Positions 47,578 through 59,411 are shown, counted from the first letter of the stretch. The stretch is DNA of 64,000 nucleotides from Diadema antillarum (GCF_040938485.1 NW_027270895.1:2170001-2234000), one strand, 5' to 3'. A program made the numbers and translations. Notes: a model not told the origin generated them from the sequence alone.

Positions 47578-49542
47578 AGAGGTTTTTGTTCAATATTCTT
47601 TATTATATGAATAAACATTGTGACATAAAGGGCATAGGTTGCCTCCTGGATTAAACAGGAGACACAAGGCAAAGACAAAGGACAATACAGAATAACATGT
47701 AAATACATCTTACCTAATAAAAGACACACTCAGTGGTTACACATACAAAATCGTAAACAAATTGACAATATACTGTATATATAAGTCTTTTCGCAGTTGT
47801 AACTGCGCATGCGCGAGAAAATCGGGTTTGGAGATAAATTAACCAAACAGTCAATGCGTGCGCGGCTCGGGCAGGGCGATCGAATCGACAGGTGATTCGT
47901 GAATGCATTGTGGATGTTGGCGGACCAACGAACGGTAATTTTTGCCGACATTCTGTGAATCTTGACTCTAGGCCTTTGATAATCTGTTTATCTATATATT
48001 CCTATATTAATGAATCATGTATTTTTTTTTTTTTATTTTATTTTTTTTTTTGCGTTGTGAGATTTTAGACGATCTTCAATCATAGTCAGTTTTAGACTAG
48101 GTCCAGGCTAACTGCGACAGCCGTCGCACGAAGCGGCGCGGTCCCCGGGGCTAGGTCCAGGCTAGGACAGGTAGGCCGGATAACGTGGCTTTCAGACAAA
48201 ACATCACATATTAAAGATAATGGATGGGACTGTTAGTGTTGTTAAGAATGAGGTTCTAACTTCTATAAATGGCATAGATTTCTAGGCCTAATGTTGAATA
48301 TGTTTTCAGGTGCAATATTTATTCATGGTTACGTACAGGCCAGGAACTGATGTTTGAGATTGCATTAATTGGATTTTTGACAAAAATACTCTTATGTTTG
48401 AATTCTGAATTCTGTCGATTTGATTGTTATGTAGACTGTTAGGTCTAGAGCACTCATAGAGCACTTACTATACCCAGTAATGGTAAATGACACCACCTTT
48501 TCTTCATGAATATTTGCTTCAAATATTTACTCTTTTAAATTACTTTTTGCAAATTCAAATTCATTGTTAGTTTACATCAATATCAAACATCCAGAAAGTG
48601 CTGAAAACATAAGCTAACAGTAACATCCAAATGTTAAAAGAAAAAAAAATTATACCTACTTTAATTCCATAGTCACCAAAATGATCCCGTACGGTTTTGG
48701 GACTTTTGTACACGAGTGTGCACTCAAACAAATGCCACTGTATTTTACGTTCGTGCCCGTATAAGGTCATATTACTTGTAATTTGACCTTGTACTTGTAG
48801 AAGTGGTCTAGAGAAGACTATAGATCTACGTGTAAACTCAGCCTATAGTATGAGTATGACATGTTATTGTAAAACCTTAATTAAATGGGAGTCTTTGGAT
48901 GAGAGAGCACATTTTTTTGTCACTGTGAGAAAGATGTTGAAGGTGTGAGTGTAAAGTTGTTATGTTTAATATTGTGTACGGTGTGCGTGTATGTCTTAGC
49001 ATCTTGTTTACATTTGTGGAGAGTGAGTCATCAGATCTATGTCTAGCGTCAGAGCATGAAAGAGGCTTGCAAGTAATATTGCATAACCATGCACAGTGCC
49101 TGATTCCCCCATTCTGCGGGGAGCAGTCGATTTGGTTCACAATTCCAATTGTTCTAACTTCTCCGCAGGATGGTGGTGGTGGATTTGACAAGCACCGGCA
49201 TGGTACTGTGCACTGTTTCTTTATGCAACCTACTTTTTGGTCTTTGCTTCCTTCATTTTTTTTTTAATTGACAGAACCCTTTCCGGTGTAACTATCGAAA
49301 ATCCTTACATGTTGGTCTATATTGCTATATATTTTTTTGTGTATCGTTATATTTCTTTCATGTTCAATGCCCAACTAGCTATGCATTAATTCAGTTGGGC
49401 CTAGAAGATGATTAATTATGCCTACTTTTGTGTGCTGGGCAGTAGAGCCAGCACATTTTAGTTTTTACACATAAAGATGGTTTGGATAGATAGTATCGTA
49501 AATTATTTTGTTTCCTTTTCTTCCACTTCAGCTCGAATCACC

Positions 49543-51117
49543 ATGAAGCTGTGTGCAGTTGTCGGCTGTAGCAATGGATCTTATCAGCTGGATAAGTGGA
49601 AGCAGGGAAAATGCTCCAAGCATCAAACTTTCAATGGACTAGGGTGTTGTGATTGTGATCCTCCATTTCATCTCTTCCCATTTCCCACTGAGAAGCAAGA
49701 TCAAGATGGCAGAAGGCGATGGAATAAGCTTATGAACCAAAAGGATCAATCAACTGGTAAAAACTGGATAAACAAACCTCATGATAGAGTGTGTTCGAAA
49801 CATTTCCCGGATGGGAAACCAACCTTGGCGCATCCTGATCCTGTACTTCATCTTGGATACAAACTTTCACCGCAAATAGCACCAAAGCGTGCACCACCAA
49901 GAGATCGTGAAGAGCCAACCAAATCTAGGAAAAGAGTTTGCCGTACTCCCACTACATCTTCAACACCAAGTCCATCTATTGGCATGGCTGCTTCAGTGAA
50001 GGTTGAAGAGGATCACAGGTACACTTACAAGTGTGATTGCAAGCCTAGTTGTGATTGTGTAGGCTGCATCCAAAAACAGGCAAAAATTATTTCTCTTGAA
50101 CACAGAGTCAAGGAGTTACAACACAAATTAATTTCAAGACAAACTGAAAACAAAGGACCAAAGAGCTGCAGAAAGAAACTTATATGTGCAGAGAACATAA
50201 GTACTGACAAAGATGTTAACCATTGTACAGGTATCAGCTCCAAACAAGCATTTGAGGACATGTACAAATTTGTAGAGCCTCATGCAAAGACAATGAGCTA
50301 CTGGAAGAGTGCTAAATGTAGCAGGAAAGGCCGTCCATTCAAGGGTACCCCAAAGAAATCTGGTCCAAGGAGAAAATTGCAACTCAAGGATGAATTTCTA
50401 CTTGTTCTGATGCGTCTTCGATTAGACTTGACTGTCCAGTTTCTAGCATTGCTGTTTGGAATTGTATCCAGCACATGCTCCCAGATAATTACAACTTGGT
50501 TAAGGTTCCTTGCAATGACCCTAAAACCTCTGATTGTGTGGCCAAACAGATCATCCATCTCTCTTAATATGCCCATACAATTTAGGAAGCACTGCCGGAA
50601 CATTAGATCCATAATTGACTGCACGGAAATATTCATTGAGAGGCCACGATCACTTGACCTGCAGGCATCAACTTGGTCAGATTATAAGAAACATAATACC
50701 ATTAAAGTATTAGTTGGGATCACGCCAAATGGGCATATTTCCTTCTTGTCAAAAGCCTACGGAGGAAGAGCATCTGATGTTGCAATCTTCAGAGAAAGTG
50801 GGTTTCTAAGCCTCCTAGACCCAAATGATGTTGTAATGGCCGATAGGGGATTTCCAATACAGGAAGAATTACTCTTGCACCATGCTACGCTTGAAATACC
50901 ACCAGCTGCACAAGGCAAGCGTCAGATGACAAGGAGTAAAGTGCAAAAGACAAAAGTTATTGCCAATCTTAGAATTCATGTGGAGAGAGCAATTAATCGT
51001 TTGAAAGATTTTAAAATCTTAAACAACACAATGCCTCTCACACTTGTACCCAGCGCAGATGATATATTGATTGTATGTGCAGCTCTAGTTAATCTGCAAC
51101 CAGATCTTATTAAGTGA
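49543..51117 (+). CDS. THAP-domain DDE transposase (THAP + HTH + DDE_Tnp_4/Harbinger-type), intact, 524 aa
   Basis: THAP C2CH (CAVVGC...RVCSKHF); HTH LMRLRL...LALLFGI; catalytic IIDCTE, MADRGF and IHVERAI. Start placed at ATG 49543, just after a polypyrimidine-CAG acceptor. Confidence 0.93.
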   Translation: MKLCAVVGCSNGSYQLDKWKQGKCSKHQTFNGLGCCDCDPPFHLFPFPTEKQDQDGRRRWNKLMNQKDQSTGKNWINKPHDRVCSKHFPDGKPTLAHPDPVLHLGYKLSPQIAPKRAPPRDREEPTKSRKRVCRTPTTSSTPSPSIGMAASVKVEEDHRYTYKCDCKPSCDCVGCIQKQAKIISLEHRVKELQHKLISRQTENKGPKSCRKKLICAENISTDKDVNHCTGISSKQAFEDMYKFVEPHAKTMSYWKSAKCSRKGRPFKGTPKKSGPRRKLQLKDEFLLVLMRLRLDLTVQFLALLFGIVSSTCSQIITTWLRFLAMTLKPLIVWPNRSSISLNMPIQFRKHCRNIRSIIDCTEIFIERPRSLDLQASTWSDYKKHNTIKVLVGITPNGHISFLSKAYGGRASDVAIFRESGFLSLLDPNDVVMADRGFPIQEELLLHHATLEIPPAAQGKRQMTRSKVQKTKVIANLRIHVERAINRLKDFKILNNTMPLTLVPSADDILIVCAALVNLQPDLIK

Positions 51118-52020
51118 TGTTCAGGTGGACTACAAACTTTTGTGGTAGTTTTATGTCATGACTATGATTCAAAATATTTTTGTGAGGTCAAATAACTGAA
51201 AAAAAATTGTAATGGAAAAGATGTACATATATATCCAAAACAGAGTAAAGTTTCAATTCTTCAAAGTGATGTCTTACTGCTTTTGTACTTAAAAAAAAAA
51301 ATTACATATACTACAAAGTATTTCTTCGAAAATATTTTCTTTCATATCCTTTTCCCCCCTCTCGTGCTTTGAAAGAGACAGCAAAACAACACAGTGGTGG
51401 ATCCAGGCAGGGGACAAAGTTGATGCGCGCTCCCTCTGTAATTTTAAGCCACAAGATAGTTATGGTAAATTGCAAAAATTGAATGAAATCAAATTTTTTT
51501 ATAAATGTGCTATTTTGTGGTGCTGGGTGAATAATTTTAATGCTTTGTTAAATCATTTTCAAAAGAAAATACCGAAAACTTTGGAAATATTGAATTGTTC
51601 CCATATAGGTATTGTATGTACTACATGTAGGGTCCTATAGTGATATTTTGCCATTTGTCATAATTATAAATGAAAATATGTTGTACAAAATGATTGCAAG
51701 TACTAGTAGGTTTAATTGTGTTTTGGGACAAAATCCAGCACTTTCTGTAGATCAAGTAAAAAATTTTTGAATTCACCAAAACATTGAATGTGTACACTAA
51801 TATAGCTAAATCTAATTGTCATTTTGTGCCAATTTTATATTTGCTCTTTGTGCCCCCACTCATTCCAAATCCTGGCTTGTGTAATAGAATCAATGCTCAA
51901 TCCATTCTAAATTTCATCTCACATTGTCTTAGGTGCTGTTGATGTAATGCACCTAACATTGCTTTTAGGTGCTAAATGGTTTCTAATGTGTTTATCATTT
52001 AACTTTGACCAATTGTTATA

Positions 52021-58500: not shown

Positions 58501-59185
58501 ATCATTGCATAATTTGTGTGATTCTTACCCAGCAAAGCAACTACAGTAGGCACTGTAGATTTTTCCGGAGGACTTGTCAATGGCAACCCACACGCTGTGA
58601 GGTATGTTTTTTACTGCCAATGAGGGAGTACATTGTGCTTTCAACACAGAAACTTCACTTTCCGCTGAAATTGGGTGGTAGAATATTTCGTGGAGCCACT
58701 TGCTGTTGAAGTAAGAGAAGGCCTTTCCCTCTTTGTAGTCTGAGAGTAATCTTTCTTGCAACGTTTTTGGTCTAGTACCACGCGATTTCCGTTCCATCTT
58801 ACTTGCTTCACTGCCTGGGGCAGGGCGCCTCGCTTAACAACCACTCGGCTATTTCAAAATAACTAACGGGTGGCCAAAACTTCACTCCTTCTTTTTCTGG
58901 CAACCAGTCATCTTTCAGGTCCGCCAACGGATCTGGAATTTGTTTTCCGTTTATGAACAACAATTCTGCATACTGTTTTGACCGCGATCGTTCTTCTTCA
59001 ACTTCGCTTGGTTTCACACTGTATCCAAATCGCACTGCGCTGTAGACTAACGCTTGCAGCTCCGCTTTCAAACCCGTCGTTTTTAGTCCTCTTATGCGAA
59101 GAAAATCCTTTAAAGCGTCCACTTTCCAAAATTTGATTTCTTCCAAGGTTAGCTGACGTTCATTTTCCGTCCCATTTGCCTCCAT
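55563..59185 (-). CDS. Transposon accessory protein: SAP-like domain + SWIM zinc finger + YqaJ (lambda-exonuclease-like) nuclease; 3 exons, one +1 frameshift
   Basis: Exons 59185-58529, 57762-57560, 56587-55563 with GT-AG junctions that rebuild CSCFAG|LGSSCNH (SWIM) and NK-R|KRK. YqaJ motifs RAGMITAS, GASPDG, LEIKCP and YYYQVQCQM. One extra base in GGGG at 58817-58820; corrected CDS 1884 nt (627 aa). Confidence 0.87.
56805..57167. mobile_element. Old TTAA-flanked MITE in intron 2 of the YqaJ gene
   Basis: TTAAAGCCACTGTTTAACA ... TGTTAAACTATGCCTTTAA, imperfect TIR. Confidence 0.55.
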
Positions 59186-59411
59186 TTTCGATAAATAGTT
59201 AAATATTCATTTCTGAATTCTAATCGTCACTGTACACACGTACGATTCAAGTGCAGACTACGATTATTATAAGTTTGTTTATCTCCAATGACCTTTGACA
59301 TAAACCCACAATGCAATGCGCGCCGAGATTGCGAATCGGCTTATATACCCCCTTCAAACTTCGTTTGGCGGGGGTATAAAAAAAACAAAACATATTGGAT
59401 GTTATCAACGC

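What the first reader, a model, noticed from the sequence alone, without database searches (positions are those of the whole stretch)
47783..59342. Large, near-intact two-gene DNA transposon pairing a THAP-DDE transposase with a phage-type exonuclease
Seen: both ends with TIRs and an AT target duplication, an inverted subterminal motif TTGGAGATAAA 45-54 bp inside each end, an uninterrupted 524-aa transposase with D-D-E, and a convergent spliced nuclease gene. Known: ISL2EU elements of the PIF/Harbinger-related group encode a transposase plus a YqaJ exonuclease, and to my knowledge the nuclease's role has not been shown experimentally. Inference: a candidate two-component cut-and-paste system in which a lambda-exonuclease-like enzyme processes ends or donor-site breaks. 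This is the most system-like object in the window; the family may be new even though the superfamily is known.
Basis: partly seen in the sequence, partly recalled or inferred. Interest (0 to 1): 0.72.

Follow-up and report, generated by a model that had tools for sequence, protein, structure and literature searches.

The report
Young two-gene ISL2EU DNA transposon
This is an 11.6-kb jumping gene of a known animal type (ISL2EU) that carries a transposase and a phage-like DNA-end-chewing nuclease; its 19 almost identical copies show it moved very recently, so it could be used to test what that nuclease does.

Summary
The genome has 19 full-length copies. Nine aligned copies differ at 6-21 sites in 11.5 kb. 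All copies begin AAGCC, end GGCTT and are flanked by AT. Four empty sites show a 2-bp AT duplication. The plus-strand gene encodes a 525-aa THAP + HTH_Tnp_4 + DDE_Tnp_4 transposase. The convergent minus-strand gene has three GT-AG exons and encodes a SAP / SWIM-like / YqaJ (lambda-exonuclease-like) protein with its D..ExK motif intact. This matches the published ISL2EU group of the PIF/Harbinger-ISL2EU-Spy superfamily, so it is a new member of a known kind.

- The window copy is defective. It has a private 4-bp insertion that frameshifts nuclease exon 1 and a private C>T at base 4 of the left inverted repeat. 11 of 19 copies have the transposase and nuclease exons 1 and 3 open.
- The predicted empty site does not exist. 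This copy's two flanks come from two different insertion sites, and the reciprocal arrangement is on contig C1831. The cause is either an assembly misjoin or recombination.
- The preferred target is GTATAC-like, not the published AATT.

The nuclease's role remains an inference.

The parts
47781..47782 (.). Left copy of the 2-bp target-site duplication (AT)
   Evidence: AT precedes all 20 left ends. Empty sites carry a single AT.
47783..47796 (+). Left terminal inverted repeat, AAGTCTTTTCGCAG. The family form has C at 47786; the T is private to this copy.
   Evidence: Homology with 19 other left ends starts here. The private C>T is seen.
47828..47838 (+). Left subterminal motif TTGGAGATAAA, a candidate THAP/transposase binding site
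   Evidence: Only two exact matches in the window, in inverted orientation near the two ends. Shuffle test. Unchanged in the 93-95% identical C480 derivative.
47904..47913 (+). Second motif shared by both ends, TGCATTGTGG (left copy)
   Evidence: The same 10-mer, in inverted orientation, is at 59306-59315 at the right end. This is weaker evidence than for the 11-mer.
49540..51117 (+). Transposase gene, a single exon of 525 aa plus stop: THAP, HTH_Tnp_4 and DDE_Tnp_4 domains, with D360/D435/E482
   Evidence: Pfam. Homologues of 523-527 aa align over 100% of the length. Conserved columns. Open in 18 of 19 copies.
52017..52576 (.). 560-bp palindromic insert between the two genes
   Evidence: Inverted repeats I1, I2 and I7. 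Self-complementary matches are present in every copy.
52896..53098 (.). Nested short repeat of about 200 bp with inverted ends (MITE-like)
   Evidence: Inverted repeat I3. Many genomic copies at 85-93% identity outside the element.
55563..56587 (-). Nuclease exon 3 (340 aa plus stop): YqaJ / lambda-exonuclease-like domain with the catalytic motif SPDG...LEIKCP (D226, E241, K243 in exon-3 numbering)
   Evidence: Pfam YqaJ E 6.2e-22. Acceptor AG at 56589-56588. Invariant columns. A profile hits solved exonucleases: 3syy at 1.4e-30 and lambda exonuclease at 1e-16.
56802..57170 (.). Nested repeat of about 370 bp with inverted ends, inside nuclease intron 2
   Evidence: At least 278 candidate copies at about 80% identity in the genome. 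Very high contig depth in marine RNA runs over this stretch only.
57560..57762 (-). Nuclease exon 2 (203 nt), carrying the C-x-H half of a SWIM-like CxC...CxH zinc motif
   Evidence: AG at 57764-57763 and GT at 57559-57558. Homologues P0124 and P0125 align here. No variant in this exon among nine copies.
58529..59185 (-). Nuclease exon 1: SAP domain, a linker, and the CxC half of the SWIM-like motif. It is frameshifted in this copy.
   Evidence: SAP E 3.8e-8. Donor GT at 58528-58527. In 15 of 19 copies this exon is one open 218-codon frame.
58811..58814 (-). Private 4-bp insertion (GCAG on the coding strand) that breaks the reading frame of exon 1 in the window copy
   Evidence: Absent from all eight aligned sibling copies.
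59278..59288 (-). Right subterminal motif TTGGAGATAAA (read on the minus strand)
59329..59342 (-). Right terminal inverted repeat (AAGCCGATTCGCAA on the minus strand)
   Evidence: Homology with 19 other right ends stops here.
59343..59344 (.). Right copy of the target-site duplication (AT)

Best explanation
The region is one copy of a very young ISL2EU-group cut-and-paste DNA transposon (PIF/Harbinger-ISL2EU-Spy superfamily) in an animal genome.

Shown:
- The element is 11,560 bp long, with 14-bp imperfect inverted repeats.
- It inserts at an AT dinucleotide inside a GTATAC-like palindrome and duplicates the AT.
- It carries two convergent genes: a THAP-HTH-DDE transposase and a three-exon SAP / SWIM-like / YqaJ nuclease.
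- The family has 19 near-identical full-length copies. It also has short deletion derivatives that keep only the ends.
- Several insertions have empty counterparts in the same assembly.

Inferred mechanism:
- The THAP domain recognises the conserved subterminal 11-mer at both ends.
- The DDE domain excises the element and joins it into a 2-bp staggered cut at AT.
- The nuclease, tethered to DNA by its SAP and zinc-finger parts, acts as a 5'-to-3' exonuclease on the double-strand ends left by excision. Most likely it resects the donor gap, so that the gap is repaired by copying from the sister chromatid or homologue. That would restore the element and give a net gain in copies.

The window copy itself probably depends on sibling copies, because its nuclease is frameshifted and one base of its left inverted repeat is changed.
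For: Mobility and identity:
- The ends recur at identical positions in about 20 loci with unrelated flanks.
- Mean pairwise difference is about 13 substitutions per 11.5 kb, mostly singletons.
- Four empty sites each carry a single AT.
- Target consensus: T 17/20 at -3, A 15/20 at +3, C 14/20 at +4, G or C 14/20 at -4.
- Domain content is; the D/D/E and D/E/K residues are conserved among 20 and 15 homologues respectively.
- The nuclease profile matches solved lambda-type exonucleases.

The gene pair is a unit:
- The same convergent transposase / YqaJ / SAP layout occurs in at least four other, diverged families of this genome (C802/C1672, C1179/C1444, C1405, C734).
- It also occurs on two external contigs.

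Cis sites:
- A 503-bp derivative keeps only 343 bp of the left end and 160 bp of the right end.
- An older 1.7-kb derivative at 93-95% identity has its terminal 60 and 95 bp unchanged, including the 11-mer.

Literature:
- The ISL2EU definition and the unknown role of the YqaJ gene are in PMC4482050 and PMC4122938.
- Spy, the sister clade, transposes with its transposase alone (PMC11304231). This argues that the DDE enzyme cuts both strands itself and that the nuclease acts after cleavage.
Against: - No transposition, binding or nuclease activity was measured.
- No spliced RNA was seen. The only RNA-library contigs on the gene are unspliced across the exon 3 acceptor and could be DNA.
- The SWIM call rests on the CxC...CxH pattern and on names given to homologues; Pfam SWIM is below threshold (E 0.92 in homologue P0125).
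- Two usual ISL2EU traits are not met: inverted repeats starting with GG, and an A|AT|T target.
- Placement of the transposase on a reference tree was not possible.
- No annealing-protein partner of the phage type is encoded, so the phage analogy is incomplete.
- Near-identity of the copies shows recent activity, not present activity.
Confidence: 0.9

Rival explanations
1. Same element, different role for the nuclease. It would be an obligatory second catalytic subunit that cuts the non-transferred (5') strand at the element ends, as TnsA does beside the DDE protein TnsB in Tn7. The transposase would then be heteromeric.
For: YqaJ/lambda exonuclease and TnsA share the PD-(D/E)xK nuclease fold (general knowledge). 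The catalytic D/E/K residues are invariant in 15 diverged homologues. The gene is linked to the transposase in every family examined. SAP and zinc-finger parts could place it on the element's DNA.
Against: By sequence it is closest to processive exonucleases (LHK-Exo 1.4e-30, lambda exonuclease 1e-16), and no TnsA-type protein is among the structure hits. The sister group Spy moves with its transposase alone (PMC11304231). Harbinger needs its second protein for targeting and nuclear import, not for cleavage (PMC9179366).
Confidence: 0.12
2. The nuclease gene is a passenger with no role in transposition, for example a captured gene that serves the element or the host in some other way.
For: No functional data exist for any ISL2EU nuclease. 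Several copies with a broken nuclease are still full length.
Against: The gene pair is conserved in layout across families only 39-51% identical in transposase, and on two external contigs. Catalytic residues are invariant. Broken copies are expected in any family, because the proteins act in trans.
Confidence: 0.05
3. It is not a transposon: the genes are host (domesticated) genes within a segmental duplication, or the element belongs to classical PIF/Harbinger or Spy rather than ISL2EU.
For: The DDE_Tnp_4 domain is shared with Harbinger-derived host genes. One homologue is named 'ALP1-like' by its source.
Against: There are 19 copies with exact shared borders, unrelated flanks and empty sites. 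The duplication is 2 bp, not the 3-bp TWA of Harbinger and not the absence of duplication seen in Spy. No ORF outside the two genes matches any Pfam family, Myb/SANT included.
Confidence: 0.01

Closest known systems
ISL2EU elements of animals (Repbase; Han et al. 2014 and 2015, PMC4122938 and PMC4482050)
   Same: A 2-bp AT target duplication, a transposase with THAP, HTH and DDE domains, a second gene with a YqaJ exonuclease domain, and an animal host.
   Different: It is 11.6 kb long against a published mean of about 4.8 kb; the extra length is introns and three nested short repeats. The inverted repeats start AAGCC, not GG. The target is S-T|AT|A-C (GTATAC-like), not A|AT|T. The second protein is resolved here as SAP + SWIM-like + YqaJ in three exons. 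Whether this family is already in Repbase or Dfam could not be checked.
PIF/Harbinger elements
   Same: A related DDE_Tnp_4 transposase, a two-gene organisation and AT-rich targets.
   Different: Harbinger makes a 3-bp TWA duplication and its second gene is a Myb/SANT DNA-binding protein. Here the duplication is 2 bp and the second gene is a nuclease. DNA binding is built into the transposase as a THAP domain.
Spy elements (sister clade of ISL2EU)
   Same: A related transposase and a preference for a palindromic AT-rich target.
   Different: Spy has one gene, makes no target duplication and inserts in AAATTT.
Lambda Red Exo and the Bacillus phage pair YqaJ/YqaK
   Same: The nuclease domain is a clear sequence relative (Pfam YqaJ; profile hits to lambda exonuclease structures) with the same D..ExK motif.
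   Different: The phage enzymes work with an annealing protein (Beta, YqaK). No such partner is encoded here. The enzyme carries N-terminal SAP and zinc-finger parts and sits in a eukaryotic transposon.
Tn7 TnsA/TnsB
   Same: A DDE transposase encoded beside a PD-(D/E)xK-fold nuclease; this is an analogy for a two-enzyme transposition machine.
   Different: No sequence relationship to TnsA was detected. The role here is untested and judged less likely.

Membership tests
ISL2EU group (PHIS superfamily) | 2-bp target-site duplication, 5'-AT-3' | tested here: met
   AT lies on both sides of 20/20 ends. Three homologous empty sites and one set of paralogous empty sites have a single AT.
ISL2EU group (PHIS superfamily) | Transposase with DDE (DDE_Tnp_4), HTH and N-terminal THAP domains | tested here: met
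   Pfam: DDE_Tnp_4 3.7e-49, HTH_Tnp_4 1.2e-14, THAP 2.9e-5, all above the curated cut-offs. Conserved C2CH and D/D/E columns. THAP structures are hit by the profile.
ISL2EU group (PHIS superfamily) | [quoted passage not shown] | tested here: met
   Pfam YqaJ 6.2e-22. The gene model was built exon by exon.
ISL2EU group (PHIS superfamily) | Transposase falls in the ISL2EU clade of a DDE-domain tree with reference elements | not testable with these tools
ISL2EU group (PHIS superfamily) | Usual (not defining) traits: A|AT|T target and inverted repeats beginning with GG | tested here: not met
   Flanks are T (17/20) before the AT and A (15/20) then C (14/20) after it. The termini are AAGCC.
ISL2EU group (PHIS superfamily) | Animal host | tested here: inconclusive
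The genome is 1.75 Gb, the gene has spliceosomal-type introns, and the named closest proteins are all from animals (amphioxus, sea urchin, sea cucumber, feather star).
PIF/Harbinger proper | 3-bp TWA duplication and a Myb/SANT second gene | tested here: not met
   The duplication is 2 bp. No other ORF in the element matches any Pfam family.
Spy | No target duplication, AAATTT target, single gene | tested here: not met
   The AT is duplicated, the target is GTATAC-like and there are two genes.
YqaJ / lambda-exonuclease family (the nuclease domain only) | Family profile match with the PD-(D/E)xK catalytic residues present | tested here: met
   The Pfam score of 78.9 bits is above the cut-off of 22. 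D226, E241 and K243 are invariant in 15 sequences. PDB profile hits: 3syy 1.4e-30 and 1avq 1e-16.
YqaJ / lambda-exonuclease family (the nuclease domain only) | Encoded next to a single-strand annealing protein partner, as in phages | tested here: not met
   No further ORF with a recognisable domain lies in the element.
SWIM zinc finger (middle part of the nuclease protein) | CxCx(n)CxH motif recognised by the family profile | tested here: inconclusive
   The pattern C-S-C...C-N-H spans the exon 1/2 junction. Pfam SWIM reaches only E 0.92 in the full-length homologue P0125. A source names homologue P0178 as SWIM-type. An Atlas cluster carries SAP+SWIM. The joined protein was not built or searched.

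The most novel reading that the evidence does not exclude
The family is still active, and its conserved nuclease is an essential catalytic partner of the transposase. It could be a TnsA-like second-strand cutter, or a built-in resection enzyme that turns cut-and-paste into a copy-gaining process. This family, with many natural intact copies and mapped end sequences, would be the first tractable system to show that.
Probability: 0.15. Interest if true: 0.75.

Novelty: new member of a known kind. Interest (0 to 1): 0.4.

Why it matters
ISL2EU is the only eukaryotic cut-and-paste group that regularly pairs its transposase with a lambda-type exonuclease. I found no paper in the searched library that tests what that enzyme does.

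This family is unusually well suited to such a test:
- It has 19 copies that differ by about 0.1%.
- 11 of them have the transposase and nuclease exons 1 and 3 open.
- Natural mini-derivatives define the required ends as at most 343 bp plus 160 bp.
- Its end motifs are conserved.
- Insertions appear to be polymorphic within the sequenced individual.

For genome annotation, the finding explains the two 'orphan' genes. It also flags a probable contig misjoin inside an 11.5-kb repeat.

Tried and rejected
- RNA evidence for the splice model: the only RNA libraries holding part of the stretch are marine metatranscriptomes kept as contigs. They give three short contigs on exon 3, one of which runs unspliced across the acceptor, and no joints at the predicted introns. 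The gene model therefore rests on homologue alignments and GT-AG sites.
- Rfam and tRNA scans of the element found nothing.
- Fetching all 19 copies failed. The state of the other copies was taken from six-frame searches.
- Exon 2 was checked only in nine copies.
- Pfam does not confirm SWIM.
- Other ORFs of 63 aa or more inside the element have no Pfam match, so a third gene was rejected.
- No structure prediction was run, because sequence profiles already hit solved exonucleases.
- Recent horizontal arrival was considered, because there are no copies between 99% identity and the 51% amino-acid identity of the next transposase family. I did not adopt it, because a 93-95% identical deletion derivative exists on C480.

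
Full report
**1. The observation**

A 301-bp probe across the left border finds about 20 other places in the same 1.75-Gb assembly at 99% identity. In all of them homology begins at the base equivalent to 47780-47783. A probe across the right border finds about 20 places where homology stops at the base equivalent to 59344-59346.

Printing the junctions shows every copy starting AAGCCTTTTCGCAG and ending TTGCGAATCGGCTT. 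The flanks are otherwise unrelated, with AT on both sides.

The inverted repeat is short and imperfect, 11 of 14 bases in the family form. Only 66 of 5000 composition-preserving shuffles of the two ends share any 11-mer. A second 10-mer, TGCATTGTGG, is also shared by the two ends.

**2. Copies and age**

Searches with the 4.4-kb intergenic stretch, the transposase and the nuclease exons each find the same 19 full-length copies.

Aligned with the window copy:
- They differ pairwise at 6-21 positions in about 11,550 bp, a mean of about 13, or 0.11%.
- Most differences are singletons, which fits a star-like burst.
- There are also small indels in homopolymer runs.

In transposase amino-acid identity nothing lies between these copies and the next relative at 51%. 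At the DNA level a 1.7-kb internally deleted derivative on C480 is 93-95% identical, so the lineage has been resident for some time. That older derivative has its terminal 60 bp (left) and 95 bp (right) completely unchanged, including both inverted repeats and the 11-mer. At about 5.5% divergence this is unlikely by chance, roughly 2 in 10,000 by my own calculation. It points to constraint on the ends.

On C1626 there are two adjacent 503-bp mini-elements, each made of 343 bp of the left end and 160 bp of the right end. They are separated by only 2 bp. This bounds the sequences needed in cis.

**3. Empty sites and target**

*Site A.* The window's left flank matches contig C552 at 98.3% over 1 kb. 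C552 then continues into the right flank of the copy on C1831 at 97.9%, not into the window's right flank.
- Filled: ...ctgtatatAT[element]ATacatatatg...
- Empty...ctgtatatATacatatatg...

*Site B.* Conversely, the window's right flank (its first 41 bp) directly follows the sequence of C1831's left flank in several copies of a high-copy repeat. The paralogous empty sites read ...gattcctATatacccc..., against ...gattcctAT[element]ATatacccc... in the filled state.

So the window copy carries the left flank of site A and the right flank of site B, and the C1831 copy carries the reciprocal pair. This is either a contig switch inside an 11.5-kb 99.9% repeat or a real exchange between two copies; I cannot tell which.

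*Two further loci* have clean homologous empty sites:
- C811 (filled) against C138 (empty), with flanks 99-100% identical.
- C984 (filled) against C612 (empty), with flanks 94-97% identical.

Each again has a single AT.

Many unrelated hits in this assembly come in pairs with equal scores on two contigs. All three loci tested had an empty counterpart. I infer that the assembly keeps both haplotypes in places and that these insertions are heterozygous. This is an inference, not shown.

Over 20 left and 20 right flanks the target is G/C (14/20), T (17/20), [AT], A (15/20), C (14/20). That is a GTATAC-like palindrome.

**4. The genes**

*Transposase.* The plus-strand ORF from the Met at 49540 to the stop at 51115-51117 gives 525 aa.
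- Domains: THAP, HTH_Tnp_4 and a full-length DDE_Tnp_4 (E 3.7e-49).
- Homologues of 523-527 aa cover 100% of its length, so it is a single exon.
- The closest named ones are from amphioxus (66%), sea cucumber (56%) and sea urchin (67% over 71% of the query).
- In an alignment of 20 homologues, the THAP C2CH residues (C5, C10, C85, H88) and D360, D435 and E482 (motifs IDCTE, MADRGF, HVERAI) are invariant or nearly so.
- The THAP domain holds an insert with four more invariant Cys/His residues.

*Nuclease.* The minus-strand gene was modelled exon by exon, by aligning natural homologues to the DNA and reading the splice sites.
- Exon 1: 59185-58529, donor GT.
- Exon 2: 57762-57560, AG...GT.
- Exon 3: 56587-55563, AG...stop.
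- In intact copies the exon lengths add up to 626 codons plus a stop.

Domain content of the nuclease:
- Exon 1 carries a SAP domain (E 3.8e-8 to 4.8e-8).
- A C-x-C...C-x-H pattern spans the exon 1/2 junction and looks like a SWIM finger, but Pfam does not confirm it.
- Exon 3 is a YqaJ domain (E 6.2e-22) with SPDG...LEIKCP. D226, E241 and K243 are invariant among 15 homologues.
- A profile of the exon 3 alignment hits solved lambda-type exonucleases: 3syy at 1.4e-30, lambda exonuclease at 1e-16, mimivirus R354 at 2.5e-12, and herpesvirus alkaline nucleases weakly.

No other ORF in the element has a Pfam match, and Rfam and tRNA scans are empty.

The large size is explained by the introns and by nested short repeats at 52017-52576, 52896-53098 and 56802-57170. 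These are present in all copies.

**5. State of the window copy and its siblings**

The window copy has three private substitutions. One is C>T at 47786, the fourth base of the left inverted repeat. It also has a private 4-bp insertion (GCAG, 58811-58814) that splits exon 1 into the two ORFs seen in the six-frame list. Its transposase and exon 3 are identical to the majority form.

| Coding part | Copies open | Source |
|---|---|---|
| Transposase | 18 of 19 | |
| Nuclease exon 1 | 15 of 19 | |
| Nuclease exon 3 | 15 of 19 | |
| All three | 11 of 19 | |

Exon 2 and all splice sites are invariant in the nine aligned copies.

**6. Is the gene pair a unit?**

In this genome at least four other families show the same layout, with a transposase followed by a convergent YqaJ exon and, where detected, a SAP exon. 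Their transposases are 39-51% identical to this one. They lie on C802/C1672, C1179/C1444, C1405 and C734.

Two external metagenomic contigs, with transposases 43-45% identical, show the same order and orientation. One of them has a separate SAP-containing piece beyond the YqaJ piece.

**7. Comparison with what is known**

Han et al. define ISL2EU by four features: a 5'-AT-3' duplication, a transposase with DDE, HTH and THAP domains, a second ORF with a YqaJ domain, and animal hosts. They report a mean length of about 4.8 kb, inverted repeats usually beginning with GG and an A|AT|T target. They state that the function of the second ORF is unknown (PMC4482050; also PMC4122938, and PMC9179366).

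The three defining molecular features are met here. The two 'usual' traits (GG termini, AATT target) are not.

I could not place the transposase on a reference tree or compare it with Repbase or Dfam. I therefore file it as a new member of a known kind, with a family-specific target and an unusually large, intron-bearing structure. Two text searches of the paper library found no functional study of an ISL2EU nuclease.

**8. Mechanism**

Shown:
- The element has moved: it has shared ends, a target duplication and empty sites.
- It has cis ends that stay constant.
- It has two linked genes with intact catalytic motifs.

Inferred:
- The THAP domain binds the subterminal 11-mer.
- The DDE domain performs excision and a 2-bp staggered integration.
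- The nuclease acts on the resulting double-strand ends.

I favour 5'-to-3' resection of the donor break, which would channel repair to homologous copying and restore the element. Two points support this. By sequence the enzyme is a lambda-type exonuclease. The sister group Spy transposes with its transposase alone, which suggests that the DDE enzyme of this superfamily needs no helper to cut both strands.

A TnsA-like second-strand role is the main alternative. A passenger gene is unlikely, given the conserved linkage.

**9. Verdict**

This is a correct and careful first-stage reading of an element that belongs to an already described group. It is ordinary in kind. It is notable as a very young, many-copy, largely intact family that could make the long-open question of the ISL2EU nuclease testable.

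Note s1-224730 describes the same nuclease gene as 'one base from intact'. Comparison with sibling copies shows the break is a 4-bp insertion.

Noticed in passing
window 47783-59342 with L005/L025 (C1831) and L041 (C552): The window copy has the left flank of one insertion site and the right flank of another, and the copy on C1831 has the reciprocal pair. This is either a contig misjoin inside the 11.5-kb repeat or a real exchange between copies. The copies on C41 and C108 (at 22 kb) likewise share an identical right flank but have different left flanks.
   Followed up: partly
window 56802-57170: A repeat of about 370 bp with inverted ends sits in nuclease intron 2. It has at least 278 candidate copies at about 80% identity in the genome. 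Summed contig depth over it is enormous (up to about 78,000) in three marine metatranscriptome runs. Rfam has no match.
   Followed up: partly
window 59343-60400: The element is inserted in a high-copy repeat of about 900 bp that ends in a 41-bp hairpin-like stretch (atatacccccttcaaacttcgtttggcggggg...). It is followed by another repeat of about 1 kb with thousands of candidate copies at 90-94% identity.
   Followed up: partly
L042 (G000:C1626:328687-329696): Two head-to-tail 503-bp mini-elements (343 bp of the left end plus 160 bp of the right end) are separated by only 2 bp, as if the second had inserted at the AT flanking the first.
   Followed up: partly
G000:C41:3269216-3336536 and G000:C793:843859-870508: Tandem arrays with a period of about 6.2-6.5 kb. 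Each unit holds a decayed, stop-containing relative (about 43% identity) of the SWIM-side part of nuclease exon 1.
   Followed up: no
window 49540-49850 (transposase residues 1-100): The THAP domain has a long insert between its second and third zinc ligands. The insert carries four further invariant residues (C25, H28, C37, C39) in 20 homologues. It may be a nested second zinc site typical of these transposases.
   Followed up: no
window 55943-56616: One marine metatranscriptome run holds three short contigs at about 99% identity on the YqaJ exon. One of them runs 29 bases past the predicted acceptor into the intron, so it is unspliced RNA or contaminating DNA.
   Followed up: partly
window 52017-52576: A 560-bp near-perfect palindrome (arms 85-96% complementary) lies between the two genes in every copy. 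The own-genome search listed no copies of it outside the element.
   Followed up: no
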